DNA of 64,000 nucleotides from Macrostomum lignano (Eukaryota). The notes beneath the pieces are model-generated. The model searched no databases and had not been told where the DNA came from. It saw only the letters and a list, made by a program, of their open reading frames with translations. Position 1 is the first letter of the stretch. Every line of letters begins with the position of its first letter. The DNA lies in NCBI GenBank assembly GCA_002269645.1, contig NIVC01000906.1:186001-250000 (forward strand), written 5' to 3'. Both the position numbers and the translations under genes were made by a program. Below, piece after piece: positions 1 through 50,386 of the stretch.

Positions 1-32
1 CCGTCATTTGGTTCACTTGCTGCTCACAAGCC

Positions 33-65
<33 letters not shown>

Positions 66-1938
66 GCTATCCGTGCAGGCAGTCAGTCTATTTGTGAATT
101 TTCTGGTGGATCTGAAGAAAACCCGTCCGGCACAGGATTAAAGAGAAAGAGACGATCTGTTTTGGGTGAGTATTATCTGCTGTAGAAGTATTGTACACCA
201 GAGTACTTGTGTTACTTGGTAGAGCACAATTCAAAAGCAATGCAACAATCTCAGTGGCATTGTTGGGACACAAGCTACAAACGCATTGAATAGTAAACAC
301 AGCCCAGCCTAGCTCAAGGCTAGTAATTTGTTGGGCATTTATTGGGACATTGCAGCCAGGCCTATTTTTTGAACAGCATTTGTTGGGTCGCACTTATTGG
401 GACAATACTGATTCTAATCGCGACTACTTCTGAGTTCTGACTTTTCAAAACAGACCCAGCATTAGTTGAACACGTTCTATTAAAGGGTTCCTTTATAGCC
501 TATTAATGATTACTAAAGCAAGCCTATCTTAATTGATTTCTTTTCCTCGCAGATTCTGAAGTCAGCCACGCCAGCGACATGCCTAAGAGACAAGAATGCG
601 CTTTAACGATCAGCAGCGAGCATTCTGATCTCGCCGCTGCATCCGTCATTTGGTTCACTTGCTGCTCACAAGCCGCAGCAGCAGCAGCCGCTATCCGTGC
701 AGGCAGTCAGTCTCTTTGTGAATTTTCTGGTGGATCTGAAGAAAACCCGTCCGGCACAGGATTAAAGAGAAAGAGACGATCTGTTTTGGGTGAGTATTAT
801 CTGCTGTAGAAGTATTGTACACCAGAGTACTTGTGTTACTTGGTAGAGCACAATTCAAAAGCAATGCAACAATCTCAGTGGCATTGTTGGGACACAAGCT
901 ACAAACGCATTGAATAGTAAACACAGCCCAGCCTAGCTCAAGGCTAGTAATTTGTTGGGCATTTATTGGGACATTGCAGCCAGGCCTATTTTTTGAACAG
1001 CATTTGTTGGGTCGCACTTATTGGGACAATACTGATTCTAATCGCGACTACTTCTGAGTTCTGACTTTTCAAAACAGACCCAGCATTAGTTGAACACGTT
1101 CTATTAAAGGGTTCCTTTATAGCCTATTAATGATTACTAAAGGCAAGCCTATCTTAATTGATTTCTTTTCCTCGCAGATTCTGAAGTCAGCCACGCCAGC
1201 GACATGCCTAAGAGACAAGAATGCGCTTTAACGATCAGCAGCGAGCATTCTGATCTCGCCGCTGCATCCGTCATTTGGTTCACTTGCTGCTCACAAGCCG
1301 CAGCAGCAGCAGCAGCAGCAGCAGCAGCCGCTATCCGTGCAGGCAGTCAGTCTATTTGTGAATTTTCTGGTGGATCTGAAGAAAACCCGTCCGGCACAGG
1401 ATTAAAGAGAAAGAGACGATCTGTTTTGGGTGAGTATTATCTGCTGTAGAAGTATTGTACACCAGAGTACTTGTGTTACTTGGTAGAGCACAATTCAAAA
1501 GCAATGCAACAATCTCAGTGGCATTGTTGGGACACAAGCTACAAACGCATTGAATAGTAAACACAGCCCAGCCTAGCTCAAGGCTAGTAATTTGTTGGGC
1601 ATTTATTGGGACATTGCAGCCAGGCCTATTTTTTGAACAGCATTTGTTGGGTCGCACTTATTGGGACAATACTGATTCTAATCGCGACTACTTCTGAGTT
1701 CTGACTTTTCAAAACAGACCCAGCATTAGTTGAACACGTTCTATTAAAGGGTTCCTTTATAGCCTATTAATGATTACTAAAGCAAGCCTATCTTAATTGA
1801 TTTCTTTTCCTCGCAGATTCTGAAGTCAGCCACGCCAGCGACATGCCTAAGAGACAAGAATGCGCTTTAACGATCAGCAGCGAGCATTCTGATCTCGCCG
1901 CTGCATCCGTCATTTGGTTCACTTGCTGCTCACAAGCC

Positions 1939-1971
<33 letters not shown>

Positions 1972-3845
1972 GCTATCCGTGCAGGCAGTCAGTCTATTTG
2001 TGAATTTTCTGGTGGATCTGAAGAAAACCCGTCCGGCACAGGATTAAAGAGAAAGAGACGATCTGTTTTGGGTGAGTATTATCTGCTGTAGAAGTATTGT
2101 ACACCAGAGTACTTGTGTTACTTGGTAGAGCACAATTCAAAAGCAATGCAACAATCTCAGTGGCATTGTTGGGACACAAGCTACAAACGCATTGAATAGT
2201 AAACACAGCCCAGCCTAGCTCAAGGCTAGTAATTTGTTGGGCATTTATTGGGACATTGCAGCCAGGCCTATTTTTTGAACAGCATTTGTTGGGTCGCACT
2301 TATTGGGACAATACTGATTCTAATCGCGACTACTTCTGAGTTCTGACTTTTCAAAACAGACCCAGCATTAGTTGAACACGTTCTATTAAAGGGTTCCTTT
2401 ATAGCCTATTAATGATTACTAAAGGCAAGCCTATCTTAATTGATTTCTTTTCCTCGCAGATTCTGAAGTCAGCCACGCCAGCGACATGCCTAAGAGACAA
2501 GAATGCGCTTTAACGATCAGCAGCGAGCATTCTGATCTCGCCGCTGCATCCGTCATTTGGTTCACTTGCTGCTCACAAGCCGCAGCAGCAGCAGCCGCTA
2601 TCCGTGCAGGCATTCAGTCTCTTTGTGAATTTTCTGGTGGATCTGAAGAAAACCCGTCCGGCACAGGATTAAAGAGAAAGAGACGATCTGTTTTGGGTGA
2701 GTATTATCTGCTGTAGAAGTATTGTACACCAGAGTACTTGTGTTACTTGGTAGAGCACAATTGAAAAGCAATGCAACAATCTCAGTGGCATTGTTGGGAC
2801 ACAAGCTACAAACGCATTGAATAGTAAACACAGCCCAGCCTAGCTCAAGGCTAGTAATTTGTTGGGCATTTATTGGGACATTGCAGCCAGGCCTATTTTT
2901 TGAACAGCATTTGTTGGGTCGCACTTATTGGGACAATACTGATTCTAATCGCGACTACTTCTGAGTTCTGACTTTTCAAAACAGACCCAGCATTAGTTGA
3001 ACACGTTCTATTAAAGGGTTCCTTTATAGCCTATTAATGATTACTAAAGGCAAGCCTATCTTAATTGATTTCTTTTCCTCGCAGATTCTGAAGTCAGCCA
3101 CGCCAGCGACATGCCTAAGAGACAAGAATGCGCTTTAACGATCAGCAGCGAGCATTCTGATCTCGCCGCTGCATCCGTCATTTGGTTCACTTGCTGCTCA
3201 CAAGCCGCAGCAGCAGCAGCAGCAGCAGCAGCAGCCGCTATCCGTGCAGGCAGTCAGTCTATTTGTGAATTTTCTGGTGGATCTGAAGAAAACCCGTCCG
3301 GCACAGGATTAAAGAGAAAGAGACGATCTGTTTTGGGTGAGTATTATCTGCTGTAGAAGTATTGTACACCAGAGTACTTGTGTTACTTGGTAGAGCACAA
3401 TTCAAAAGCAATGCAACAATCTCAGTGGCATTGTTGGGACACAAGCTACAAACGCATTGAATAGTAAACACAGCCCAGCCTAGCTCAAGGCTAGTAATTT
3501 GTTGGGCATTTATTGGGACATTGCAACCAGGCCTATTTTTTGAACAGCATTTGTTGGGTCGCACTTATTGGGACAATACTGATTCTAATCGCGACTACTT
3601 CTGAGTTCTGACTTTTCAAAACAGACCCAGCATTAGTTGAACACGTTCTATTAAAGGGTTCCTTTATAGCCTATTAATGATTACTAATGCAAGCCTATCT
3701 TAATTGATTTCTTTTCCTCGCAGATTCTGAAGTCAGCAACGCCAGCGACATGCCTAAGAGACAAGAATGCGCTTTAACGATCAGCAGCGAGCATTCTGAT
3801 CTCGCCGCTGCATCCGTCATTTGGTTCACTTGCTGCTCACAAGCC

Positions 3846-3887
<42 letters not shown>

Positions 3888-3890
3888 GCT
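1..3890. repeat. Tandem array of ~625-643-bp units (exon+intron) with a variable (GCA)n tract
   Basis: Near-identical units; exon-like parts start at 553, 1178, 1817, 2460, 3085, 3724. The only large differences are GCA copy number and a 1-bp intron indel (387/388 bp). Confidence 0.97.
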
Positions 3891-3911
3891 ATCTGTGCAG
3901 CAGTCAGTTAA
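1..3911 (+). CDS. 3' part of a gene made of tandemly repeated symmetric phase-1 exons (DSEVSHASDMPKRQEC...polyAla...LKRKRRSVL)
   Basis: Each unit has acceptor ttttcctcgcag| and donor G|gtgagt. Exons: <1-165, 553-789, 1178-1429, 1817-2071, 2460-2696, 3085-3336 (complete copies are multiples of 3, open, phase 1-1). The last copy 3724-3911 diverges to stop TAA; AATAAA at 4032. Confidence 0.6.
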
Positions 3912-4115
3912 TTCATGAGTTTTTTGGCGGAGCTGGTTATTTTTTTAATTTTCTGAATCGAGAAGCCGATTAACTGCTGTGTGCTTCACTGGAATATTAT
4001 TTAGAGGACGCATTTTTTGCAGTCTGTTTCTAATAAAATCCGGTGCAATGACCGCGGTAGAGCTCTAGCATTTGCTTTTTATAGTATTTGTGTATATTCT
4101 TTTTCAAGCTATGCT

Positions 4116-4365
4116 GGAATTGTTGGGACAGCCCTATCCACACTGGCTATGGTGGAATTGTTGGGACAGCCCTATCCACACTGGCTATGGTTGAATTGTT
4201 GGGACAGCCCTATCCACACTGGCTATGGTGGAATTGTTGGGACAGCCCTATCCACACTGGCTATGGTTGAATTGTTGGGACAGCCCTATCCACACTGGCT
4301 ATGGTGGAATTGTTGGGACAGCCCTATCCACACTGGCTATGGTGAAATTGTTGGGACAGCCCCAT
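4116..4365. repeat. 38-bp minisatellite (~6.5 copies)
   Basis: GGAATTGTTGGGACAGCCCTATCCACACTGGCTATGGT repeated. Confidence 0.95.
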
Positions 4366-6020
4366 ACTGTAGTGTGTGCTGGCTTCTGCTATAGTGTGGT
4401 TCATTTCCGCATCCTTTTACGTAGCATTCTGTGGGTCCGAATAGCTGACATGTACCTTTTGAGTAATTCTAGTGATTGTGTCATAATCAATAAAGTACAT
4501 TTTTATGAACAGTGGAGTTTCGCTACAGAATTGTTTTTTCCCAGTGGCACTAAATGTAGCAAATTTTGTTTATTCAGATCGTAAAATTTTTTTGATATGT
4601 GTCAATGTCGTTTGTCTTCGATAACCTTAAAGTCCCTTGCCATTTACCATCCTGTCTTCTATAATCTATGATCGCTGAAATTATCTGGTGAAATTTGACG
4701 CGCTGATATTATTGCCTTAGTGGAATTCAGCAAGACACCAGGGTTTTTTAATTCTGTTTTAGACAAGTATACATGTACAATCTGTTGTGAGTTCAATGCA
4801 CCTCGAAAAATGCTTTCCAACTGTTTTCAGTAAGCCAAAAGCATATTGTCAATAAAAATCTATTTGGTGGGTTGAAAATTGCCTGTGTGGGGACGTGTGT
4901 GTGTGTGATTTTTCGTGTGTCGGAGCAGTCCCAATATGTGCAAGTTTTTGCACACTTGGCCAATAAGTGCCTCGTGCACGTTTGTGTGCGTATCCGCGCG
5001 CTTGTGTGCCTGCTCAAGGTCACATCGCCTGTCTCCAATAAAAAAGTTCAATTGACTGTTGAAACAGAAATAACCTGAAGTTGCAACCATCTTACCTAAT
5101 CAAAAAGGAAAGTTGAATAAACGGCTCCGCTTTCCTTTTCGTTGCCCATTTCCCTTCGACACTGGTTGTGCACCATCTCAAGTTGTCTGCATGCTTAGTT
5201 TCAGATCTAGCATAACTTGCTTTTTCAGCTACCGTTTTTAAAACTCTTTTGTTTATTTTAAAGCTGAAATATGAAATTCTCCACAACTTACTAATTGAAT
5301 TTACAATACTTCAAAGCGGCAGTCTTTGGATAAGCCCATCTCGAAAATTTGTTGAAGAGTTTTATTCGTAAATGAAGTTTTGAAAACGAAATTTTACATT
5401 AAAGATCTGCTATTTTAAGCGAGACCATTTCTGATGTTGTGTGTAAATTAAAAAACGGTATCACACTAAACAAACATGATCGAAGGTCAAAATGGACCGA
5501 AGGGCTAAATCGAATTCAAGGTTTGAAATAATAGAACTGCACAGCTTAGCAAATCTCTCACTGACTCTTGCGAGTTGTTAAAGCAAATTTTATTTTAATT
5601 TCGTCTCGATCTTGAGTTCAATATTCAGGAAAAAGGGTTTGAATCTAAAAAGAGGTTCAGAATTATTCTTGTCACTGGATTGCAACAGATACGAATTAAG
5701 AATTCCTAAGGCAAGATGAAACTCAGATGAGTTCAGTCTAATGACACCGTTTTACTGAGGGTTTCTTTGCAACTTGCAACTGGTAAATCATGATTTGTGG
5801 AATTAAACTGATTCGAAATCAAAATCGATAAGAATTTGCACGTAAAATCGAGCAATTACGTCACAATAAAACATTGAGTTAACACACACCAATCGGTGGG
5901 CGCAATCAGGTAGACCGCGCAGATAATGACTCTCTAGGTCAAAAAATGTTTAACAAGCACTACGTAATTTCAGACTCATCCATAATCAAGAGCGTGCTCA
6001 AGTCTGACAGTGATCACTGC

Positions 6021-9000
6021 TCAACAATTCTGCCACTTCTTGATTCCCCTCTCGATCCATTCCTCGATGTCGCGGACTTTGCGTTCAGCGGCCGTGTGCC
6101 AGAGGTTCGCGATCGTGTCGGCCGGGATCGGGTCGAGTTCGCGCGAATGCTTCAGACCGCTAATCTGCGACACAATGTAAGCTTTGAACTCGCGGTGACG
6201 CTCCTGCGGGTGCTCACGCTCGGCGATCCGGTCGAGTTCGTCGGGCTCGAACTGTACGGGGCTACGGACCAGGATCATTAAGGTCACCTGCAGCAGGTTG
6301 TTCAACTCCGTTTCCTGCTTTTGGACGCGAACCTCGGACTCGGATTTGGTGAACAGCAGGCCGCCGAATGTGTGGCCCTTCCGCAGGGTCGGCAGCGGGC
6401 TCTCCAGGTAGTCGTAGACAATCGATGCGCCAGGTCGGTGGGACGTCTGGAGTTTGGGGACACAATACGAGAAATTCATATGACAGTTGGACAATAGAAA
6501 CTCTGACATCTAAAAGCCCTAACGACCTTTCTGGTAAACCGTTTACTCTTGACTGAGCATCTGCTTCTCGCAGACTTTCCAGGAAAAATTAAACTACAAA
6601 CCTTGAGATTTTTCGGCGTCAACGACCACGGCAGAGTGGCGGTCTCCTGGCCGAAGAGTTTCCAGATTTGCAGCAAATCTTTTATCATTTTAAAGCCTTG
6701 CAGTTTGGTGTACGCCCGGCCCTGCTCAGCCTCGATGAAATCTTGCAGCGAACTGTTGTACGCGGAATGCAGTACGCACAGCTCGAACTTGTCGTTGAAC
6801 GTGACCATCAGAGTGATGGCCACGCAGCGCTGGTTTCTAACTACATTGCCCTTCATCAGATGGTGATTCGGGATGCCGCCGAGGCAAAGCGTTGAGCCAA
6901 TCCCCGAGTTGTCCGGACCCCCTCCAGCGCTGCTACAAAGCTGCGTCACTGTGACGCCAATGCCGGAGTCCTGTGTGCGCTCAAATTTGGCGTAGCCACT
7001 GGTCAAGTGGCAAAGTTGGCCCAGGCAGGTGGACGCGATTGGCTTCGTCAGGTTCGCGGACGGCAGGTGGCCGTAGGCTTGAACGTTTCGAAGTGCTTCA
7101 GCGGACACTAAGCAGAACTGGACGCTCAGCCACACGCTGCGCGCGGCTGGACTCTCTTTGGCCAGCAGTTTCTGCAGTTTGGCGGCAAACTTGTGCCGCG
7201 ACTGGGACAGGTTGAGCAGACAGGCCTCGGCCTGCTTCAGCGTGTAGTCCACGCCTGCGAACATCCGGCGAACCACTGCGTTCAGATCGATGCTCGAGTA
7301 GAACTCTTTGGCCACTTCGCTCTTCCACTCGGGAGTGTTGGGGTTCACGCCTTTGTTCTTGTTGACCGTGGCGGCCGTCCACAGCTTCCTGACCCATTTG
7401 ATGAAGCCGGCCTCGGATTTCCATTCGACGCTAAAATTAAGCTTAACAATGTTCATGACGAGCTCGTCGGCGTGAGTACGAATTAGATCCTGCCAAGGAC
7501 TTGACGGCTGGTCTTTTGACGCGTTCGAGAACATCTTTTTAAGCTTTTCAACCTCGTTGAACAGCACCGTCCTCAGATCGTTGATCTTTCTTTCAAGCGA
7601 CTCTTGAATCTCCACATTGAGCAGGTGCAACACGTAGTTATTAATCTGCTCCCGGTATTGCTGCTCAACCTCGTTGTTCCTGATCCTGCTGTACAACCGC
7701 AGCGGCCCGAACTCCAGTCGTCGGCACTCGTCAATGATGGCCTTCTCGCTGCGCTTGTGGATATCCGTCAGCTCCTGTAGAAATTTCGATTTGCACTCTT
7801 TCAGCTTGGTTTTGGTGTCTCGGAAGCTCTGCAGGATGCGCTCTTTAGAGGCCTGCTCGGCCAGCTGGGCTCCTTCCTCCGCCTCGGCGCCGGAGTCTCG
7901 AGTGAAGGCGTCGAATGTGCGCACGGACACCAGGAAGAGTGTAGAGAGGGCCAGCTCCATCCGACTTCGTCCAGTCTCCAGTAGGCAGTCCTTGAGCGCT
8001 GCCACCATCGCCTGGTACTGCGCCTCGTAGTCTTTGTTGAGCTGGCTGATCTGCTCCGAGTCGCCATCGAGGGGGAAGCGCTGGCGCAGCACGGACACGG
8101 GATAAACTGTCTGCCTGCCGCTGCCGCCCGTCAGCTTGTACTTGGCCAGCTGGTCCACCACAAGTCTCTGTTTTCTCCGCTGCGTCTGCAAGCCGCTGTC
8201 GTGGAAGCGAGAGTCCGACAGCTCCGAGTCCTCCAGGTCCGAGTCGCCGTCCATCTCCTCGGCCTCGGGATCGTAGTCAACTTTGTTGATGACGAAGAAT
8301 ATGCGAATATCCGGAATGCTGGCTTTGAGAAAGAAGAGAAACTCGCGATCCTGCGTGGGCGGAGGGTGCCAGACAGACACATTTATGGATTTGCCACCAG
8401 TGAATGCTTACGTTGGAAATCTACGAAAAAATCTAATCGCTGCTTAAGCAGCTTAAGTGTACAAAAATGTCTCTCGAGATTCTGGAGATTTTAATGCTCA
8501 AAAATTACGGACGGTTAGATTTATGAATAATCAAATACAGGGGGTCATTAGATAAATACTCTTCAAGGTAATATTGGGTTGTAGCCTGATATTGTTTACC
8601 TTCCAAAGAGTCAGACCCTCTTGCAGATTTAAACCGAAGCGAATTTCCATAGATATTCCATCCGATAAAATTGTTTTACTCTACAAGAACAATACAATTC
8701 AGACCGGACTAGCAGCCCCGGCTGGCAAGGTAGCGAATTAAATTTCCTAATTCTGAAAGTCAAGCGAGCCGAAAAAATATTTTGGAAATCAATAATTTTT
8801 TCTTCAGGGCGCAAAATATAGCGCCTGCGGCGCCAAAATGAGTGCCTGCGGCGCTAAAAGGAATGCCTACGGCGCCAAAATGAGTGCTTGTGGCGCCAAA
8901 ATGAGTGCCTGTGGCGCCAAAATGAGTACCTGTGGCGCTAAAAGGAATGCCTACCGGCGCCAAAATGAGTGCCTGTGGCGCCAAAATGAGTGCCTGTGGC

Positions 9001-17515: not shown

Positions 17516-18389
17516 CTAAAGAAAGTTCGCGAAGGTCACTACAAGACCAATATGGATTGTGGACTTAGGCGGCAAGTGCTCAGCCCAGTCATTAGAGAGC
17601 CCTAGGATCACCGTAGCCCCCCTCTCCTTGCGGGAAGTGGCGTGGTGTAGGAGCCCGTTGACCTCAAGGTCAGGGTGCAGCTTTAGCAATACTCGTATTT
17701 GCCTAAGCTGATCTCCGGACTTAATGGCACTGCCGGCCGGGATCCAGACGCGAAAGCGCTGGCGAAGACGAGCTTGCCGAGCTTCTTGGGCCAGTTCAGC
17801 TTTGGCAGAAGCTCGCGTAGACTGCGGCTGCTCTCCTCCGAGCTGCACCAGATGAAGATGCAGCCGTCGGTCTTGGCGGACTTGACCACGCTCACAGGGC
17901 GGCCCGCCAGGAGCTGGTCGATGAGCGCAGCATCGATGGTGCGCCAGGCACTGTCGAGCTCGTCGGCCGTGAGGTCTTGCTCTTCCCCGAAGACGATGAC
18001 CGCCGGTTGGAGCTTGACCTTTGAGGCGTAATTAGTGCGGCGGTTCCCCAGCTCACCAGCGGGGGTTGTATCCTTGGGGGCAGGGGTTACTGTGGCTCCT
18101 TTCGGGCCAACAGCAGCCTCGTCCTCCCTAGGTTCCCCCTCCGCCGGTGGTCGGCCCGCAGTCGCCGTCGCCGCTCGTTGCGGCGTTGGTTGCGGGCGCG
18201 TCGGGCTTCAGCGGAGGGCCCGGTTGCGCGTGCGGGCATGTCACCGGCCGAGCCGGCGGCAAGCCCATCTGCCCCCAGTGGGGCGGCGCTCGTGCCAGAG
18301 TCACCGGCCGGAGTTGCCGGGGCCCCGGCTTCAGCGGGGTTGAAAGAGGCGGATAACGCCATAGCTGAAAGCGGGAAGGATGAGATGAG
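17516..18389 (-). pseudogene. Non-LTR retrotransposon ORF1 (DUF4780-like) fragment with two frameshifts
   Basis: ..NYASKVK..AWRTIDAAL..CIFIWCSSEESSRSLRELLPKLNW..RFRVWIPAGS..LLKLHPDLEV..GATVILGLS..HIGLVVTF matches the DUF4780 pattern as recalled. Confidence 0.6.
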
Positions 18390-18995
18390 GCACGGTGCTG
18401 ATGAGATGAGACGCTTCGCTTCGCTGAAGGCCATCTCGCATTTTGCGTCCCAGTTCCATGGCGTGTCCTTGCGCAGGAGCGCTGTTAGCGGCTCGGCGAC
18501 GTGAGACAGGTTCTTGATGTAGAACTGGAAGAACTTTGCAAAGCCAAGGAATGAGGCTAACTTTGCCGTATTTGTGGGTGCCTTGAGTCCCGATACGGAC
18601 CCGGTGTGCGACTGGAGAGGTTGAATTCCCGCTGCGCTGACGCGGTGCCCAACGAACTCGATCTCCGACGCCTTGAAGGTTGCACTTCTTGAGGTTGACG
18701 GTTACTCGATGCTGCAGCAGCTTGTCCAGTACCTGAAGTACGCGACTTTCGTGCTCAGCTTCAGTACCGGCGTGAACGGCGATGTCGTCTTGATAGTGAA
18801 CGACGCCTCTGATGCCTTGGAGGATCTTGCCGACGACCTTCTGGAAGGCCGCCGGATCCGAGCTGATGCCGAACGGCATGCGTCTGAAACGGTAGAGGCC
18901 GAATTCGGTGTGGAAGCAGGTCAGATTCTTGGCGTCATCGTGCAGAGGCAGCTGTAGATACGACTGGTTGAGGTTGATTCGTGAGAAAAACTTCG
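18390..18995 (-). pseudogene. Ty3/Gypsy reverse transcriptase fragment with one frameshift
   Basis: FSRINLNQSYLQLPL..FHTEFGLYRFRRMPFGISSDPAAFQ..HYQDDIAV..KKC/FKASEIEFVGH..SFLGFAKFF..EPLTALLRKDTPWNW..AFSEAKRLISSAPCL. Confidence 0.93.
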
Positions 18996-24640: not shown

Positions 24641-27600
24641 ATGCAATCCCAACCATTGCCCACTGCCGGCCCCTCTCCTGTGCCAGCGGAGCCGCCCAAG
24701 GACACCAGCCAAGACTCCGCAGCCATCCCTGAGGACGAATGGATTCGCACTGGGGCGCAGTACACAGCTATGCAGCGCCTGTCCATGACCATGCTGGGTC
24801 AGGGACCCCTGCCGAACCACCTGGCCATTATCATGGACGGCAATAGGCGATTCGCCAGATGTCACGGCCTGCAGAAATCGCAGGGCCATCTGCGCGGCTT
24901 TCAAAAAGTTGGCGAAGTGCTGGAATGGTGCCGCGACCTGGGCATTAACGAAGTGACCGTCTACGCTTTTAGCATCGAGAATTTCAACAGGAGCGCCGAG
25001 GAGGTGGCCGGCCTCTTGCAGCTGGCCAGGCAGAAATTCGACCGACTATTGCAGGAGTTAGACCGGCTCCGGGCCTACGGGGTCTGCGTCCGGGTGCTGG
25101 GCAATCTGCAACTGCTGCCTGCCGATCTGAGGGCCGCTGCAGCCAGGGTCATGCAGGCCACCAGGTCTGCGGCCTGGCGTCATTCTGGTTTGGGAGATTG
25201 TGGCTTGGGGTCACTCTGGGTTGGGAGATTGTGGCTTGGGGTCACTCTGGGTTGGGAGATTGTAGCTTGGGGTCATTCTGGGTTGGGAGATTGTAGCTTG
25301 GGGTCACTCTGGGTTTGGATATTGTAGCTTGGGGTCATTCTGGGTTGGGAGATTGTGGCTTAGGGTCACTCTGGGTTGGGAGATTGTAGCTTGGGGTCAT
25401 TCTCGGTTGGGAGATTGTAGCTTGGGGTCATTCTGGGTTGGGAGATTGTAGCTTGGGGTCATTCTGGGTTGGGAGATTGTAGCTTGGGGTCATTCTAGGT
25501 TGGGAGATTGTAGCTTGGGGTCATACTGGGTTGGGAGATTGTAGCTTGGGGTCATTCTGGGTTGGGAGATTGTAGCTTGGGGTCACTCTGGGTTTGGATA
25601 TTGTAGCTTGGGGTCATTCTGGGTTGGGAGATTGTGGCTTAGGGTCACTCTGGGTTGGGAGATTGTAGCTTGGGGTCATTCTGGGTTGGGAGATTGTAGC
25701 TTGGGGTCATTCTGGGTTGGGAGATTGTAGCTTGGGGTCATTCTGGGTTGGGAGATTGTGGCTTAGGGTCACTCTGGGTTGGGAGATTGTAGCTTGGGGT
25801 CATTCTGGGTTGGGAGATTGTAGCTTGGGGTCATTCTAGGTTGGGAGATTGTAGCTTGGGGTCATACTGGGTTGGGAGATTGTAGCTTGGGGTCATTCTG
25901 GGTTGGGAGATTGTAGCTTGGGGTCATTCTGGGTTGGGAGATTGTAGCTTGGGGTCATTCTGGGTTGGGAGATTGTAGCTTGGGGTCATTCTGGGTTGGG
26001 AGATTGTAGCTTGGGGTCATTCTGGTTTTGGGAGATTGTAGCTTGGGGTCCTTCTGGGTTGGGAGATTGTGGCTTGGGGTCACTCTGGGTTGGGAGATTG
26101 TAGCTTGGGGTCATTCTGGGTTGGGAGATTGTAGCTTGGGGTCACTCTGGGTTTGGATATTGTAGCTTGGGGTCATTCTGGGTTGGGAGATTGTAGCTTG
26201 GGGTCATACTGGGTTGGGAGATTGTGGCTTGGGGTCACTCTGGGTTGGGAGATTGTAGCTTGGGGTCATTCTGGGTTGGGAGATTGTAGCTTGGGGTCAC
26301 TCTGGGTTTGGATATTGTAGCTTGGGGTCATTCTGGGTTGGGAGATTGTAGCTTGGGGTCATACTGGGTTGGGAGATTGTAGCTTGGGGTCATTCTGGGT
26401 TGGGAGATTGTAGCTTGGGGTCATTCTGGGTTGGGAGATTGTAGCTTGGGGTCATTCTGGGTTGGGAGATTGTAGCTTGGGGTCATTCTGGGTTGGGAGA
26501 TTGTAGCTTGGGGTCACTCTGGGTTGGGAGATTGTAGCTTGGGGTCATTCTGGGTTGGGAGATTGTAGCTTAGGGTCACTCTGGGTTGGGAGATTTTAGC
26601 TTGGGGTCATTCTGGGTTGGGAGATTGTAGCTTAGGGTCACTCTGGGTTGGGAGATTGTAGCTTGGGGTCATTCTGGGTTGGGAGATTGTAGCTTGGGGT
26701 CATTCTAGGTTGGGAGATTGTAGCTTGGGGTCATACTGGGTTGGGAGATTGTAGCTTGGGGTCATTCTGGGTTGGGAGATTGTAGCTTGGGGTCATTCTA
26801 GGTTGGGAGATTGTAGCTTGGGGTCATACTGGGTTGGGAGATTGTAGCTTGGGGTCATTCTGGGTTGGGAGATTGTAGCTTAGGGTCATTCTGGGTTGGG
26901 AGATTGTGGCTTAGGATCACTCTGGGTTGGGAGATTGTAGCTTGGGGTCATTCTGGGTTGGGAGATTGTAGCTTGGGGTCATTCTGGGTTGGGAGATTTT
27001 AGCTTGGGGTCATTCTGGGTTGGGAGATTGTAGCTTAGGGTCACTCTGGGTTGGGAGATTGTGGCTTGGGGTCATTCTGGGTTGGGAGATTGTAGCTTAG
27101 GGTCACTCTGGGTTGGGAGATTGTGGCTTGGGGTCATTCTGGGTTGGGAGATTGTAGCTTGGGGTCATTCTGGGTTGGGAGATTGTAGCTTAGGGTCACT
27201 CTGGGTTGGGAGATTGTGGCTTGGGGTCACTCTGGGTTGGGAGATTGTAGCTTGGGGTCACTCTGGGTTGAGAGATTGTAGCTTGGGGTCACTCTGGGTT
27301 GGGAGATTGTAGCTTGGGGTCACTCTGGGTTGAGAGATTGTAGCTTGGGGTCACTCTGGGTTGGGAGATTGTGGCTTGGGGTCATTCTGAGTTGGAAGTT
27401 TGTCGTTTGGGAGATTGAGTTAGGATATTCTGGGTTTGGTGATCTTGGTTTGGGAGGTTGTGGGTTGGGAGATTGTGTGTTTCTTCAGTTGAAACAGTTC
27501 AAGAATGACACATAGAGTGGAGAAATTCAAACGAATCAGGTCTGCAATGTTTACTTCAGCGGCAGAATTAGAAGTCAGCACTCATCAAGAATACTGCTAT

Positions 27601-39528: not shown

Positions 39529-41197
39529 TCAAGGTGCGGAGAGTCCGGCCAGCCTTTTCAGCATCTCTTCGTCATCGTCTTTGCTAGATGAGGCTGCGGC
39601 TGCCCCCGGCGTTGCTGCCGACGTAGACGGCGCCTTGGACATCTGGGCATTCATGTCGATGCCGATTTCATCTAGGACTTGGGCCACTACCTGGCGGGAG
39701 TTGGTTGATGGGTATGGGAGTCATGTGCAATATGATAGGGAACTCGATTTTGAGTGGGATAAATATGGATTCTGAATGGGGATAAATATGGATTCTGAAT
39801 GGGGATACCGGATAAATATGGATTCTGAATGGGGATAAATATGGATTCTGAATGGGGATAAATATGGATTCTGAATGGGGATAAATATGGATTCTGAATG
39901 GGGATAAATATGGATTCTGATGTAGAGAACTGTAAATCATATCAGAACGCACTACCTAATATAATATTCTAATAAAATTAATTTAAACTCGCAATCTAAT
40001 TTTAGAATGAGTCATGATGAGTCATATCTATTTTTATAAATTCTATTTTTAGAATGAGTCACGTGCAAACAGAAGTGACTCAGAGCCCTACGTAGGACCG
40101 ACGTTTATTTGATCAAGGAACCGGTTCTCGGGAGTTGTATTTGCTTAATTCCATATATGGAAACGATCAAACATGCATGACCCCTTCAGACTCAGAGAGG
40201 TCTCAAGGAATACCTTGGAATACGTCAACTAAGAAGACCCATCTCTGAGAGAAGAAATCCGGACCGATTCGTAAGCGTTTACCCGATTTAGTTATTTGTT
40301 ACTAGCGCTAATAAGTTGATTAATTGAGATTACGAGAGCCATTGATTGTCGACACATTTGAGACAGGCCTCCTTGTTTCCTAGGATACATTCCTAGAGGA
40401 TTATTGATTTGAATTGAGTTATCCGTTACGTTTCGGACGTAGGGAGTTATTGAGTGACTCATCACCACCCAATAAACTCTTCACTGAATAAGGATAAATA
40501 TGGATTCCAAATCGGGATAAATATGAATTCTGAATAGGTATAAATATGGATTTTCAATTGGGATAAATATAAATTTTTAATTGCGATAGATATGGATCCT
40601 GAATGTGGAAAAATATGGATTTTCCATTGGGATAAATATGAAATCTAATAGGAAAAACATGAAATCTATTGCTAATAATCCTATGGGATTACTATTGATC
40701 ACAGTCCAGCCTCTCACCTTATCCTGCTCAGCTTCATCATCCGAGCCGGCAAAAATGTCGTCCAAAGCTTCGTTCATAGTCTCCTCGGACATCTCCATCT
40801 TCATGTTGGACTCCTGAAACTGACGCATAGTTTTCATGGTGTCCTCCGGCGAGATCGCTTTATTCATCTGGCCCATAGTCTTTGTCGTGGTCTTCATAGC
40901 GTCGGCCATTTTCAAATTGGCGCCCATCACTTTCTGTTGAGTGCCAACAGCGGACACTTTGCTGCCCATAGCGTAGCTGCGGGTCTTCTGCTGCCGCAGG
41001 CGGACCAGCTGTTTCGCCAGCACCGAGCAGGCCTCCTTGTTGCCCTGCTTTGCTGCTTTTTTAATCTCCCCTTCGATGCGTTTCTCCTCGCGCTCCAGAT
41101 GGCCCCGGTCGCGTTCCAGATCTCGCTGGGTCTTCTTCAGCTCCCGATCGTTGGCCCGCATCTGCTCCTGCACTGTTGGCTTCTTCCAGAATGCCAT
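39529..41197 (-). CDS. CHMP2B: ESCRT-III subunit CHMP2B, 213 aa
   Basis: Exons 41197-40718 and 39690-39529. Snf7 pattern ..AKQLVRLRQQKTRS..MEMSEETMNEALDDIF..VVAQVLDEIGID and C-terminal MIM-like EEMLKRLAGL. Confidence 0.95.
39755..40640. repeat. 24-bp minisatellite split by the solo LTR
   Basis: GGGATAAATATGGATTCTGAATGG; homogeneous at 39755-39920, degenerate at 40484-40640. Confidence 0.85.
39921..40483 (+). mobile_element. Solo LTR (563 bp), probably Gypsy
   Basis: TG...CA ends (TGTAGAG...CTCTTCA), 4-bp TSD CTGA at 39917-39920 and 40484-40487, AATAAA at 40471. Confidence 0.75.
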
Positions 41198-41339
41198 GCT
41201 GAGTAGCTGTCAGTTAATTTCTGCATCAAAGAAGTTTTTTTCGAAGCGAATGTTGCAATGGCAGCTCTGTGAAATTCAATGCCTAATCCAGCTTTTTTAC
41301 AAAAAAAACTATGAGGCCGCTCTAAGGGACCGACAATTC

Positions 41340-42985
41340 TGAGATGTCCGGAGATTCTTTCGGACGGATTCTGGGATGTCCGGGGATTTTTTCGGGCGGA
41401 TTTTGGGTGTCCGGAGATTCTTTCAGGGAGATTTTGGGATGTCAGGAGATTCTTTCGGGCGGATTCTGGGTGTCCGGAGATTCTTTCGGGCGGATTCTGG
41501 GATGTCCGGAGATTCATTCGGGCGGATTCTGGGTGTCCGGAGATTCTTTCGGGCAGATTCTAGGATGTCCGGAGATTCTTTCGGGCGGATTCTGGGATGT
41601 CCGGAGATTCTTTCGGGCGGATTCTGGGATGTCCGGAGATTCTTTCGGACGGATTCTGGGATGTCCAGAGATTCTTTCGGGCGGAGTCTGGGATGTCCGG
41701 AGATTCTTTCGGGCGGATTCTGGGATGTCAGAAGATTCTTTCGCGGAGATTTTGGGATGTCCGGAAATTCTTTCGGACGAATTCTGGGATGTCCGGAGAT
41801 TCTTTCGGACGGATTCTGGGATGTCCGGAGATTCTTTGGACGGATTCTGGGATGTCCGGAGATTCTTTGGACGGATTCTGGGATGTCCGGAGATTCTTTC
41901 GGACGGATTCTGGGATGTCCGGGGATTTTTTCGGGCGGATTCTGGGTGTCCGGAGATTCTTTCGGGCGGATTCTGGGATGTCTGGAGATTCTTTCGGGCG
42001 GATTCTGGGATGTCCGGGGATTTTTTCGGGCGGATTCTGGGATGTCCGGAGATTCTTTCGGGCGGATTCTGGGATGTCCGGAGATTCTTTCGGGCGGATT
42101 CTGGGATGTCCGGGGATTTTTTCGGGCGGATTCTGGGTGTCCGGAGATTCTTTCGGGCGGATTCTGGGATGTCCGAAGATTCTTTCGGGCGGATTCTGGG
42201 ATGTCCGGAGATTCTTTCGGGCGGATTCTGGGATGTCCGGAGATTCTTTTGGGCGGATTCTGGGATGTCCGGGGATTTTTTCGGGCGGATTCTGGAATGT
42301 CCGGGGATTCTTTCAGGGAGATTTTGGGATGTCCGGAGATTCTTTCGGGCGGATTCTGGGTGTCCGGAGATTCTTTCGGGCGGATTCTGGGTGTCCGGAG
42401 ATTCTTTCAGGGAGATTTTGGGATGTCCGGAGATTCTTTCGGACGGATTCTGGGATGTCCGGAGATTCTTTCGGGCGGATTCTGGGATGTCCGGAGATTC
42501 TTTCGGGCGGATTATGGGATGTCCGGAGATTTTTTTGGGCGGATTCTGGGATGTCCGGGGATTTTTTCGGGCGGATTCTGGAATGTCCGGGGATTCTTTC
42601 AGGGAGATTTTGGGATGTCCGGAGATTCTTTCGGGCGGATTCTGGGTGTCCGGAGATTCTTTCGGGCGGATTCTGGGTGTCCGGAGATTCTTTCAGGGAG
42701 ATTTTGGGATGTCCGGAGATTCTTTCGGACGGATTCTGGGATGTCCGGAGATTCTTTCAGGGAGATTTTGGGATGTCAGGAGATTCTTTCGGGCGGATTC
42801 TGGGATGTCCGGAGATTCTTTCGGGCGGATTCTGGGTGTCCGGAGATTCATTCGGGCGGATTCTGGGTGTCCGGAGATTCTTTCGGGCGGATTCTGGGTG
42901 TCCGGAGATTCTTTCGGGCGGATTCTGGGATGTCCGGAGATTTTAGGGTGTCCGGAGATTCTTTCGGGCGGATTTTGAGGTGTCC
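41340..42985. repeat. 32/33-bp CpG-rich minisatellite (~50 copies) upstream of CHMP2B
   Basis: CCGGAGATTCTTTCGGGCGGATTCTGGG(A)TGT repeated. Confidence 0.97.
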
Positions 42986-48933: not shown

Positions 48934-49079
48934 TTTTTATATTATATTTTTCTTTGTGTTTTTTCACAGGTACACACCGACAAGATACTTCCGCTAGGAG
49001 GCAGACAGTTGCGGCAGCATGCAACAAACATTGTAAAAAATATTATATGTCAATTCCGGTCCACGGGAATTTCCCTCTG

Positions 49080-50386
49080 TAGCTGGTGCCCCAACCACCT
49101 CTGTAGCTGGTGCCCCAACCCCTCTGTAGCTGGTGCCCCAACCACCTCTGTAGCTGGTGCCCCAACCACCTCTGTAGCTGGTGCCCCAACCCCTCTGTAG
49201 CTGGTGCCCCAACCACCTCTGTAGCTGGTGCCCCAACCACCTCTGTAGCTGGTGCCCCACCACCTCTGTAGCTGGTGCCCCAACCCCATCTGTAGCTGGT
49301 GCCCCAACCCCCTCTGTAGCTGGTGCCCCAACCCCCTCTGTAGCTGGTGCCCAACCACCTCTGTAGCTGGTGCCCCAACCACCTCTGTAGCTGGTTCCCC
49401 AACACCCTATGTAGCTGGTGCCCCAACCACCTCTGTAGCTGGTGCCCCCACCCCATCTGTAGCTGGTGCCCCCACCCCATCTGTAGCTGGTGCCCCCACC
49501 CCATCTGTAGCTGGTGCCCCCACCCCATCTGTAGCTGGTGCCCCAACACCCTCTGTAGCTGGTGCCCCAACACCCTCTGTAGCTGGTTCCCCAACACCCT
49601 ATGTAGCTGGTGCCCCAACCACCTCTGTAGCTGGTGCCCCCACCCCATCTGTAGCTGGTGCCCCAACACCCTCTGTAGCTGGTGCCCCACCCCATCTGTA
49701 GCTGGTGCCCCAACACCCTCTGTAGCTGGTGCCCCAACCCCATCTGTAGCTGGTGCCCCAACACCCTCTGTAGCTGGTGCCCCCACCCCATCTGTAGCTG
49801 GTGCCCCAACACCCTCTGTAGCTGGTGCCCCAACCCCCTCTGTAGCTGGTGCCCCAACACCCTCTGTAGCTGGTGCCCCAACACCCTCTGTAGCTGGTTC
49901 CCCAACACCCTATGTAGCTGGTGCCCCAACCACCTCTGTAGCTGGTGCCCCCACCCCATCTGTAGCTGGTGCCCCAACACCCTCTGTAGCTGGTGCCCCC
50001 ACCCCATCTGTAGCTGGTGCCCCAACACCCTCTGTAGCTGGTGCCCCAACCCCATCTGTAGCTGGTGCCCCAACACCCTCTGTAGCTGGTGCCCCCACCC
50101 CATCTGTAGCTGGTGCCCCAACACCCTCTGTAGCTGGTGCCCCAACCCCCTCTGTAGCTGGTGCCCCCACCCCATCTGTAGCTGGTGCCCCAACCCCCTC
50201 TGTAGCTGGTGCCCCAACCCCATCTGTAGCTGGTGCCCCAACACCCTCTGTAGCTGGTGCCCCCACCCCATCTGTAGCTGGTGCCCCAACCCCATCTGTA
50301 GCTGGTGCCCCAACCCCATCTGTAGCTGGTGCCCCAACCCCCTCTGTAGCTGGTGCCCCAACCCCATCTGTAGCTGGTGCCCCAAC
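49080..50386. repeat. 24-bp minisatellite (~54 copies)
   Basis: TGTAGCTGGTGCCCCAACACCCTC repeated. Confidence 0.97.

What the first reader, a model, noticed from the sequence alone, without database searches (positions are those of the whole stretch)
1..3911. Protein repeat built by tandem amplification of a whole exon+intron cassette, with polyAla length varying per exon
Seen: every ~630-bp unit keeps a strong acceptor and donor around an open, symmetric phase-1 exon (G|AT gives Asp at each junction). It encodes a Cys-containing segment, a (GCA)n polyAla tract and an NLS-like KRKRR. The final copy diverges to a stop followed by AATAAA. Inference: this is an expanding modular gene rather than plain satellite, and any copy could be skipped without frameshift.
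Basis: partly seen in the sequence, partly recalled or inferred. Interest (0 to 1): 0.72.

Follow-up and report, generated by a model that had tools for sequence, protein, structure and literature searches.

The report
Spliced exon-cassette array inside a flatworm transposon
The 630-bp tandem repeat really is a run of spliceable exon-plus-intron cassettes, but it sits inside one copy of a many-copy, probably mobile element of the flatworm Macrostomum lignano and not in an ordinary expanding host gene.

Summary
Window 1-3911 holds 6.3 tandem units of 625-643 bp, more than 99% identical. Each unit has a GT-AG intron and a phase-1/phase-1 exon of 237-255 nt. The exon encodes DSEVSHASDMPKRQECALTISSEHSDLAAASVIWFTCCSQ(A)7-13IRAGSQSxCEFSGGSEENPSGTGLKRKRRSVL. 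The last copy ends at TAA (3909-3911), and AATAAA follows at 4032.

The organism is Macrostomum lignano. Public RNA-seq-derived protein models from sister copies contain exactly these exon junctions, so splicing is supported.

The "expanding host gene" reading is only partly right. The array belongs to an element of about 8 kb. At least five copies share fixed left and right ends and have unrelated flanks.

A 14.3-kb relative (three copies, 99.8% identical) carries homologous 655-bp cassettes with the same intron position and phase. There they lie inside a continuous 1741-aa ORF. That ORF has a basic N-terminus, no signal peptide, two zinc-finger-like motifs and a C-terminal region with tyrosine-recombinase-like motifs, which no profile search confirmed.

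If circularised, the ends would form a 17-6-17 inverted-repeat site. A TTGGGAC motif marks both ends, every cassette intron and a 38-bp minisatellite.

In the window's subfamily the first exon has no ATG and carries a stop, and the catalytic part is deleted. It is probably a non-autonomous copy. I found no purifying selection on the repeat.

The parts
1..165 (+). 3' part of a cassette exon cut by the window edge; poly-Ala 13
   Evidence: Frame 2 translation VIWFTCCSQ(A)13IRAGSQSICEFSGGSEENPSGTGLKRKRRSVL; donor at 166
553..789 (+). Cassette exon, 237 nt, phase 1-1, poly-Ala 7, SQSL variant
1178..1429 (+). Cassette exon, 252 nt, poly-Ala 12
1817..2071 (+). Cassette exon, 255 nt, poly-Ala 13
2460..2696 (+). 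Cassette exon, 237 nt, poly-Ala 7, SQSL variant plus S->I
3085..3336 (+). Cassette exon, 252 nt, poly-Ala 12
3724..3911 (+). Terminal exon coding part, poly-Ala 16, ends ICAAVS-TAA (stop 3909-3911). It is shortened by a 1-nt deletion relative to the L001 copy.
790..1177 (+). Representative cassette intron, 388 nt, GTGAGT...CAG. The others are 166-552, 1430-1816, 2072-2459, 2697-3084 and 3337-3723. Each carries three exact TTGGGAC motifs, further variants, and a branch-point-like GATTACTAA.
4032..4037 (+). AATAAA poly(A) signal, 121 nt after the stop
4108..4362 (+). 38-bp minisatellite, 6.7 copies, each with ATTGTTGGGACA. It is shared with the long relative of the element.
4926..4944 (-). Subterminal copy of the motif in inverted orientation (CAGTCCCAATATGTGCAAG)
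4962..4984 (+). Right terminus of the element: 17-nt arm AATAAGTGCCTCGTGCA plus CGTTTG. Homology to the other copies stops here, at about 4988.

Best explanation
The array is the internal repeated-exon region of one probably non-autonomous copy of a large multi-copy element of Macrostomum lignano.

Shown:
- Each unit of about 630 bp is a true exon+intron cassette that is spliced GT-AG in phase 1.
- The whole structure is bounded by fixed termini and present in several copies with unrelated flanks. It runs from a 5' region through degenerate 5' exons, the cassette array, a terminal exon, a poly(A) signal, a 38-bp minisatellite and a 3' terminal region.
- A 14.3-kb relative has the same ends and homologous cassettes inside one 1741-aa ORF.

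Inferred:
- The array grows and shrinks by unequal recombination or slippage between cassettes. Because every exon is 3n and phase 1-1, any change leaves the frame intact, so copy number drifts. The (GCA)n tract slips independently in each exon.
- The long relative is the autonomous form. Its C-terminal region is a tyrosine-recombinase-type enzyme. The element moves Crypton-like through a circle, using the 17-6-17 site formed by its joined ends and the crossover TTTG in TG-rich DNA.
- The window's subfamily has no start codon in exon 1, a premature stop, and the catalytic part deleted. It is probably carried along in trans.
- The poly-Ala ORF here is a young relic that is still transcribed and spliced, and is not a selected host protein.
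- The TTGGGAC motif at both ends, in every intron and in the minisatellite is probably the binding site of the element's own protein. An intronic splicing enhancer is the alternative.
For: Cassettes and splicing:
- Anatomy.
- RNA-seq-based CDS with these junctions at sister copies. The annotation method is described in PMC5730564.

Dispersed element:
- Copies L001, L003, L004 and the window share homology only between fixed boundaries.
- fam3 copies L005-L007 are 99.8% identical over at least 12.6 kb with unrelated flanks.
- fam1 and fam3 share the left 440 bp at 73% and the right 820 bp at 97%. Both have the same terminal 17-mers and the same spacer.
- Young copies are flanked by (TG)n on both sides.

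Relative (fam3):
- Cassettes of 655 bp with identical intron position and phase.
- Continuous 1741-aa ORF in L006.
- The RNA-seq-based model P0040 covers two cassette junctions and the C-terminal part.
- No reverse transcriptase or other enzyme ORF in the element.

Recombination-type features:
- Inverted arms match 13/17, with chance about 2e-5 per random pair.
- Crypton properties from PMC3212892: short terminal direct repeats, non-autonomous derivatives sharing both ends, and YR sites of two inverted repeats around a 6-8-bp spacer.

Decay of fam1:
- No ATG and a TGA stop in the exon-1 homologue in four copies.
- Exon diversity is close to intron diversity: pi 0.0052 against 0.0068.
- fam1-fam3 DNA identity is 69% in the exon and 66% in the intron.
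- Only 2/16 exons in L002 and 1/4 in L004 are intact.

Motif: 25 TTGGGAC on the + strand at 1-4400 and none in the remaining 59 kb of the window. In L005 there are 34 inside the element and 0 outside.
Against: - No profile or sequence search recognises a recombinase or any transposase in the long ORF. Pfam, NCBIfam, PHROGs and PDB sequences were tried.
- The AlphaFold model of that region is unusable, with pLDDT 36.6.
- The YR assignment therefore rests on motifs I recognise from knowledge (NRRRSSE, GKRGRSVPI, FLRKHCAT, HLGHDITVHRQFYRL) and on the architecture of the ends.
- No empty site, excision footprint or circle was seen.
- M. lignano is a neopolyploid with a redundant assembly, so some copies may be homeologues and not transpositions.
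- The open frame is kept across three subfamilies at 31-51% protein identity. Some selection for an open frame has therefore acted, at least in the long form.
- The window's own five complete exons are all intact, so translation from the internal AUG (MPKRQ...) is not excluded.
- The frameshifts counted in the sister copies could partly be PacBio assembly errors.
Confidence: 0.6

Rival explanations
1. An ordinary or domesticated host gene. It would be a lineage-specific modular protein with acidic Ser/Ala-rich 80-aa modules punctuated by KRKRR. Its dosage or length would be tuned by cassette amplification. The protein could be nuclear with repeated NLS-like patches, or a polyprotein cut at R-K-R-R.
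For: - RNA-seq-based CDS models exist.
- The frame, unit length and junction are kept in three diverged subfamilies, and KRKRRS is invariant.
- All window exons are intact.
- A poly(A) signal follows the stop.
Against: - The locus is one of at least five dispersed copies with fixed ends and unrelated flanks.
- The upstream exon has no ATG and has a stop.
- No signal peptide exists in the full-length relative.
- There is no excess conservation of exon over intron.
- Sister arrays are degenerate.
- The unit is predicted disordered apart from one helix, with pLDDT 55.7.
Confidence: 0.2
2. A dispersed segmental duplication, not a transposon. The 8-14-kb block would have been copied by the rearrangements of a neopolyploid, repeat-rich genome, for example recombination at (TG)n microsatellites, with no dedicated enzyme.
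For: - (TG)n lies at both ends.
- No recognisable transposase was found.
- Assembly redundancy is documented (PMC5730564).
Against: - The boundaries are identical to the base in two subfamilies whose interiors are only about 67% identical.
- The right 820 bp is kept at 97%.
- The joined ends form a 17-6-17 inverted site.
- The same motif is at both ends in inverted orientation.
Confidence: 0.1
3. An operon-like array of mini-genes. Each acceptor would be a spliced-leader trans-splice site, and each unit would encode its own 84-aa pre-peptide: MPKRQ..., with the hydrophobic Ala-rich stretch as signal peptide, ending ...SVLGEYYLL* if unspliced.
For: - M. lignano trans-splices about 30% of its genes and has operons with spacers of about 100 bp (PMC8629364).
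- Each unit has an ATG 27 nt after the acceptor.
- The unspliced ORF closes 6 codons after the donor.
- ATTAAA lies about 75 nt before the next acceptor.
Against: - Every unit has a consensus GTGAGT donor, and RNA-seq models show cis-splicing.
- The stretch that would be 5' UTR (SEVSxASD) is conserved as protein across subfamilies.
- fam3 units contain no Met at all.
- Maximum Kyte-Doolittle 19-residue hydropathy is only 1.51 in fam1 and 0.6-0.7 in fam2 and fam3.
Confidence: 0.05
4. Non-coding satellite or assembly artefact. The ORF and splice sites would be accidental and multiplied by copying, or the array would be an assembler expansion.
For: - Units are more than 99% identical, so the six exons are one observation.
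- No selection is detectable within the family.
Against: - Arrays with different copy numbers occur on five or more independent contigs of another assembly.
- RNA-seq-derived spliced models exist.
- A homologous cassette, 31% identical as protein, keeps the ORF, intron position and phase.
Confidence: 0.05

Closest known systems
Crypton DNA transposons (tyrosine-recombinase elements) and their non-autonomous derivatives (Kojima & Jurka 2011, PMC3212892)
   Same: - One long intron-containing ORF and no reverse transcriptase.
- No long TIR or LTR.
- A constant short direct repeat at both ends (TTTG).
- The joined ends form inverted arms around a 6-bp spacer, like a YR site.
- A shorter derivative shares the 5' and 3' ends with the long form.
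   Different: - No detectable similarity to Phage_integrase or DUF3504 profiles, which animal Cryptons do match.
- The element is 8-14 kb.
- The ORF contains 9 to at least 17 in-frame exon+intron cassettes.
- The ends are embedded in (TG)n.
- Many internal copies of the terminal motif are present.
Copy-number-variable exon cassettes in host genes, e.g. the kringle IV-2 repeat of human LPA (from general knowledge)
   Same: - Whole exon+intron units are amplified in tandem.
- Symmetric phase keeps the frame.
- Copy number is variable.
   Different: - Here there is one exon per unit.
- The unit encodes a disordered low-complexity module, not a folded domain.
- The array is carried by a multi-copy element.
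Treacle (TCOF1) and Nopp140-type proteins (from general knowledge)
   Same: - Alternating acidic Ser-rich and basic stretches.
- In TCOF1, one repeat per exon.
- Basic N-terminus and nuclear-type signals.
   Different: - No sequence homology was tested or found.
- Function and localisation here are unknown.
Furin-processed polyproteins such as nematode polyprotein allergens (from general knowledge)
   Same: Tandem units separated by R-X-K/R-R motifs (KRKRR|S).
   Different: - No signal peptide in the full-length relative.
- Units are not folded and not conserved apart from the basic block.
DNA transposons with reiterated subterminal binding motifs, such as En/Spm (CACTA) and Ac (from general knowledge)
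   Same: A short motif is present at both ends in inverted orientation and repeated many times inside the element.
   Different: - Here most copies lie in introns of the element's own gene and in a 3' minisatellite.
- No DDE transposase is present.

Membership tests
Tandem exon-cassette (symmetric-exon) repeat gene | Consensus GT-AG splice sites around each repeat | tested here: met
   TTGG|GTGAGT donor and polypyrimidine+CAG acceptor in every unit. They match the M. lignano consensus.
Tandem exon-cassette (symmetric-exon) repeat gene | Exon length 3n with the same phase at both ends | tested here: met
   Exons are 237, 252 and 255 nt, phase 1-1. The phase and position are the same in the fam3 relative.
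Tandem exon-cassette (symmetric-exon) repeat gene | Transcripts that join consecutive exons | tested here: met
   Met at sister copies only. P0004 equals the canonical splice of L002, and P0002, P0008 and P0040 also carry the junction. It cannot be tested for the window's own copy.
Tandem exon-cassette (symmetric-exon) repeat gene | Purifying selection on the encoded protein | tested here: not met
   Pi is 0.0052 in exons and 0.0068 in introns. Between subfamilies, DNA identity is 69% in the exon and 66% in the intron. Only the open frame and KRKRRS are kept.
Crypton (YR DNA transposon) | Encodes a tyrosine recombinase with the R-H-R-Y tetrad | tested here: inconclusive
   Candidate motifs lie at P0040 residues 694, 743, 818 and 843. 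There was no hit in Pfam, NCBIfam, PHROGs or PDB sequences. The AF2 model has pLDDT 36.6.
Crypton (YR DNA transposon) | Similarity of animal Cryptons to DUF3504 | tested here: not met
   No PF12012 hit even at E<=10.
Crypton (YR DNA transposon) | [quoted passage not shown] | tested here: met
   TTTG is found at both ends of all copies, and only 17-nt imperfect inverted arms are present.
Crypton (YR DNA transposon) | No reverse transcriptase or second enzyme | tested here: met
   ORF scan of L006 2832-17780 followed by Pfam. The only extra domain is a nested mariner-type HTH insertion in one copy.
Crypton (YR DNA transposon) | Multiple copies with unrelated flanks; non-autonomous derivatives sharing the ends | tested here: met
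Crypton (YR DNA transposon) | Excision as a circle and reintegration | not testable with these tools
   Needs reads or PCR across the joined ends and across empty sites.
Secreted furin-processed polyprotein | N-terminal signal peptide | tested here: not met
   The fam3 N-terminus is MRQKAAKKLKAQRKVRKRP.... The fam1 exon-1 homologue has no ATG. No in-phase upstream ATG exon was found within 3 kb.
Secreted furin-processed polyprotein | R-X-K/R-R sites between units | tested here: met
   KRKRR|S is invariant in three subfamilies.

The most novel reading that the evidence does not exclude
This would be an undescribed type of tyrosine-recombinase-like DNA transposon in flatworms, with these properties:
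- It is too divergent for the current profiles to detect.
- It integrates at TTTG within TG microsatellites through a 17-6-17 site formed by its joined ends.
- Its transposase gene contains an expandable array of in-frame exon+intron cassettes.
- The cassette introns carry the same motif as the element's termini, so amplifying cassettes multiplies both a disordered KRKRR-bearing protein module and the element's own binding sites.
Probability: 0.3. Interest if true: 0.7.

Novelty: new variant of a known kind. Interest (0 to 1): 0.5.

Why it matters
For genome annotation: what looks like a fast-expanding modular protein gene is part of a mobile-element family. The public models of it are partial "hypothetical proteins", and many mix reading frames. 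Counting these arrays as host genes inflates lineage-specific gene families in M. lignano, a regeneration model with a repeat-rich neopolyploid genome.

For transposon biology: if the long form is an active recombinase element, it would add a divergent lineage with a microsatellite target. It would also have an unusual gene architecture, with 9 to at least 17 symmetric exon cassettes and the terminal motif reiterated in its own introns. It would be a natural case for studying how symmetric exon cassettes let a coding repeat change length freely.

Tried and rejected
- Pfam on the repeat protein gave only sub-threshold noise.
- Rfam on the whole window gave nothing.
- I looked for an upstream ATG exon in phase 1 within 3 kb of the first array exon. 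There was no conserved candidate. A weak one, ATGGGCG|GTCAGC, would give MGGSSAFKLAAAS.... I dropped it because the homologous exon C in fam1 carries a stop.
- The spliced-leader AUG would read the poly-Gln frame and stop inside the first exon.
- Homology between the region upstream of the array and the cassette intron was not significant: score 14.5 against shuffles of 11.9 +/- 1.4.
- Gene IDs of the sister copies were not found in papers or in two sets of supplements.
- Neuropeptide-precursor literature gave nothing relevant.
- Satellite and Crypton literature for Macrostomum gave no description of this element.
- P0023, P0025, P0028 and P0037 could not be located on contigs.
- The fam2 subfamily (P0037) has no genomic locus available here, so its cassette structure is untested.
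- The poly-Gln and poly-Ser frames in UniProt models were judged artefacts of indel-rich ML2 sequence plus ORF-maximising prediction.
- I did not run fold search, because the only relevant model had pLDDT 36.6.
- The 'Kazal-like' label on fam3 proteins was not reproduced by Pfam.
Full report
**1. The observation**

Window 1-3911 is a tandem array of 6.3 units of 625-643 bp. Six acceptors (TTTTCCTCGCAG|) and six donors (TTTTGG|GTGAGT) delimit these exons:
- 1-165, cut by the window edge
- 553-789, 1178-1429, 1817-2071, 2460-2696 and 3085-3336
- 3724-3911, the terminal exon

Complete exons are 237, 252 or 255 nt, so all are 3n. They are phase 1 at both ends, and the junction codon G|AT encodes Asp. 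The exon encodes DSEVSHASDMPKRQECALTISSEHSDLAAASVIWFTCCSQ(A)nIRAGSQS[I/L]CEFSGGSEENPSGTGLKRKRRSVL.

Poly-Ala lengths run 13, 7, 12, 13, 7, 12, 16, and unit lengths run 625, 639, 643, 625, 639. The last expansion step was therefore a duplication of a three-unit block. Units differ at only a few positions.

The last exon ends ICAAVS-TAA (3909-3911). AATAAA is at 4032-4037. A branch-point-like GATTACTAA precedes each acceptor.

**2. Organism and transcript support**

[quoted passage not shown] Three are NCBI models of assembly GCA_002269645.1: P0002, P0004 and P0008. That annotation was built from RNA-seq with StringTie/TACO and cut at trans-splice and poly(A) evidence (PMC5730564).

The models contain the junction ...KRKRRSVL|A/D|SEVS... 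My canonical splice of locus L002 reproduces P0004 residue for residue. It cannot be assigned to this particular copy.

Many UniProt models from the older ML2 assembly mix the poly-Ala, poly-Gln and poly-Ser frames. I regard these as artefacts of indel-rich sequence and ORF-maximising prediction.

**3. Sister copies**

| Copy | Structure | Intact middle exons |
|---|---|---|
| Window | partial exon, 5 middle exons, terminal exon | 5/5 |
| L001 | first exon, 6 middle exons, terminal exon | 5/6 |
| L003 | first exon, 9 middle exons, terminal exon | 8/9 |
| L002 | first exon, at least 16 exons, runs off a contig end | 2/16 |
| L004 | first exon, 4 exons, then interrupted | 1/4 |

- In L002, eleven exons share a TGG->TGA stop and several have frameshifts.
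- Some frameshifts may be PacBio errors. The shared stop is not.
- Among 36 exons and 39 introns, diversity is the same. There are 9/221 against 16/375 variable columns, and pi is 0.0052 against 0.0068.
- The terminal exon of the window and of L003 is shortened by a 1-nt deletion relative to L001.

**4. Diverged subfamilies**

An exhaustive HMMER search found two diverged M. lignano subfamilies. Both have the same unit length and the same junction.
- fam2 (P0037) has 80-aa units and is 51% identical to fam1.
- fam3 (P0031, P0035, P0036, P0040) has 80-aa units and is 31% identical.

Only S22, D26, SQ, G61, S67 and KRKRRS are invariant. Poly-Ala and the cysteines are specific to the window's subfamily.

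AlphaFold on one unit with this small alignment gives pLDDT 55.7 and a single helix over residues 30-50. The unit is therefore largely disordered. Its maximum 19-residue hydropathy is 1.51 in fam1 and 0.6-0.7 in the others.

**5. The fam3 loci change the picture**

L005, L006 and L007 each carry 9-10 cassettes of 655 bp, with a 240-nt exon and a 415-nt intron. The splice reads ...CGA TCT GCT CAA G|gtgagc...cacag|CT TCT GAA GTC. That is the same codon position and phase as in the window.

Upstream are four further GT-AG exons that begin at an ATG. In L006 the whole chain reads as one ORF of 1741 aa. In order, the ORF contains:
- a very basic N-terminus (MRQKAAKKLKAQRKVRKRP...), which is not a signal peptide
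- about 60 residues of unknown fold
- three small exons
- nine cassettes
- an 890-codon terminal exon

The terminal exon holds a Cys-rich stretch and two C2H2-like motifs. It also holds a region in which I recognise tyrosine-recombinase-like boxes: NRRRSSE, GKRGRSVPI, FLRKHCAT and HLGHDITVHRQFYRL, at P0040 residues 694-857.

That last assignment is from knowledge only. Pfam, NCBIfam, PHROGs and PDB sequence searches find nothing, and a single-sequence AlphaFold model is unusable at pLDDT 36.6. The N-terminal 141 aa also have no hit.

**6. A dispersed element with fixed ends**

- L005, L006 and L007 are 99.8% identical from one sharp point to another, over 12.6-14.3 kb. They are unrelated outside.
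- The fam1 copies likewise share homology only between L001 positions of about 4427 and 12458. The window's homology to them stops at about 4988.
- fam1 and fam3 share the left 440 bp at 73% and the right 820 bp at 97%, although their cassettes are only about 67% identical.
- All copies begin ...TTTG|TGCATTAGGCATTTCTTGGGAC and end ...AATAAGTGCCTCGTGCA CG TTTG.
- The three young fam3 copies are embedded in (TG)n on both sides.
- Joined head to tail, the ends read AATAAGTGCCTCGTGCA-CGTTTG-TGCATTAGGCATTTCTT. These are 17-nt inverted arms matching 13/17, with chance about 2e-5 per random pair, around a 6-bp spacer.
- This is the layout of tyrosine-recombinase sites. Together with the constant short terminal direct repeat, it is the layout described for Cryptons (PMC3212892).
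- No reverse transcriptase or other enzyme ORF is present.

**7. The TTGGGAC motif**

Exact TTGGGAC occurs 25 times on the + strand within window 1-4400. That is three per intron plus one in each copy of the 38-bp minisatellite at 4108-4362. It occurs nowhere else in the 64-kb window on that strand. One inverted copy lies 40 nt from the right end.

In L005 there are 34 copies inside the element and none in the 9.9 kb of flanks. The left end also carries the motif.

GGCATTTATTGGGAC and GCACTTATTGGGACAA are identical in fam1 and fam3 introns, although the exons encode proteins only 31% identical. I infer a cis-acting role. The first candidate is binding of the element's own protein, as with subterminal repeats of DNA transposons. 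The alternative is an intronic G-run splicing enhancer.

**8. Status of the window's subfamily**

- The homologue of fam3 exon 1 is present in L001-L004 at 42-44% protein identity. It has no ATG, and a 4-nt insertion brings a TGA 33 nt before the GTAAGT donor in all four copies.
- The exon-C homologue also has a stop.
- The first array exon has no ATG and no in-frame upstream continuation.
- The ORF ends right after the array, so the zinc-finger and recombinase-like part is missing.

This is what a non-autonomous derivative that shares ends with an autonomous partner looks like. Such derivatives are known for Cryptons. The intact poly-Ala frame in the window is best explained by youth and homogenisation of the array. 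Translation from the internal AUG (MPKRQ...) is not excluded.

**9. Mechanism, with shown and inferred parts separated**

Shown:
- cassette anatomy and splicing at sister copies
- variable copy number
- fixed element ends and unrelated flanks
- the homologous long ORF in the relative

Inferred:
- The array length changes by unequal recombination. Symmetric phase-1, 3n exons make every change frame-neutral.
- The (GCA)n tract slips independently in each exon.
- The element moves by a recombinase encoded by the long form, through a circular intermediate, into TTTG in TG-rich DNA.
- KRKRR acts as a basic or NLS-type patch in a disordered linker, not as a convertase site. This follows from the full-length protein lacking a signal peptide.

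**10. Verdict**

The exon-cassette reading is right, and the "expanding host gene" reading is mostly replaced by [quoted passage not shown].

It is not filed as a Crypton, because the defining recombinase similarity was tested and not found. It resembles one in the architecture of its ends, its single long ORF and its autonomous/non-autonomous pairing.

Noticed in passing
window 4108-64000: The window is extraordinarily rich in minisatellites, with 75 TRF rows. Examples are 31 bp x72 at 25175-27411, 32 bp x51 at 41336-42942 and 24 bp x55 at 49073-50386.
   Followed up: no
window 6476-8380 (-): A 634-aa open frame in a 55% GC stretch with no Pfam match. In sister locus L003 the element lies antisense inside a 981-aa TIR_2-domain gene model.
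   Followed up: partly
window 18331-18879 (-), 24641-25327 (+), 40577-41197 (-): A reverse-transcriptase fragment (RVT_1), a cis-prenyltransferase exon (Prenyltransf, E=9e-34) and an Snf7/CHMP ORF (E=1e-32).
   Followed up: no
window 263-4351 and 4928; L005 2877-17098: The TTGGGAC motif is confined to the element. It occurs three times per cassette intron, once per 38-bp minisatellite unit, at the left end, and inverted near the right end. Two 15-16-nt versions are identical between subfamilies whose exons are only 31% identical as protein.
   Followed up: partly
L005 2834 and 17160; L006; L007: Young copies of the long element are flanked on both sides by (TG)n runs at three unrelated loci. 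This suggests insertion into TG microsatellites.
   Followed up: partly
L006 15477-16690: One copy of the long element carries a nested insertion of about 610 bp. It contains an ORF with a Mos1-type HTH (HTH_48/HTH_32).
   Followed up: no
L001 4483-4704 / L005 2901-3065: The conserved left 440 bp of the element is open on both strands (PVLLGPKMCWARPN... on +). It is unclear whether this is coding or a cis-acting terminal region.
   Followed up: no
window 553-789 etc.: Inside each exon there is an alternative in-phase donor (GGCA|GTCAGT) and an alternative acceptor (CAGCAG|CG). UniProt models use them. They may be real minor isoforms or prediction artefacts.
   Followed up: partly
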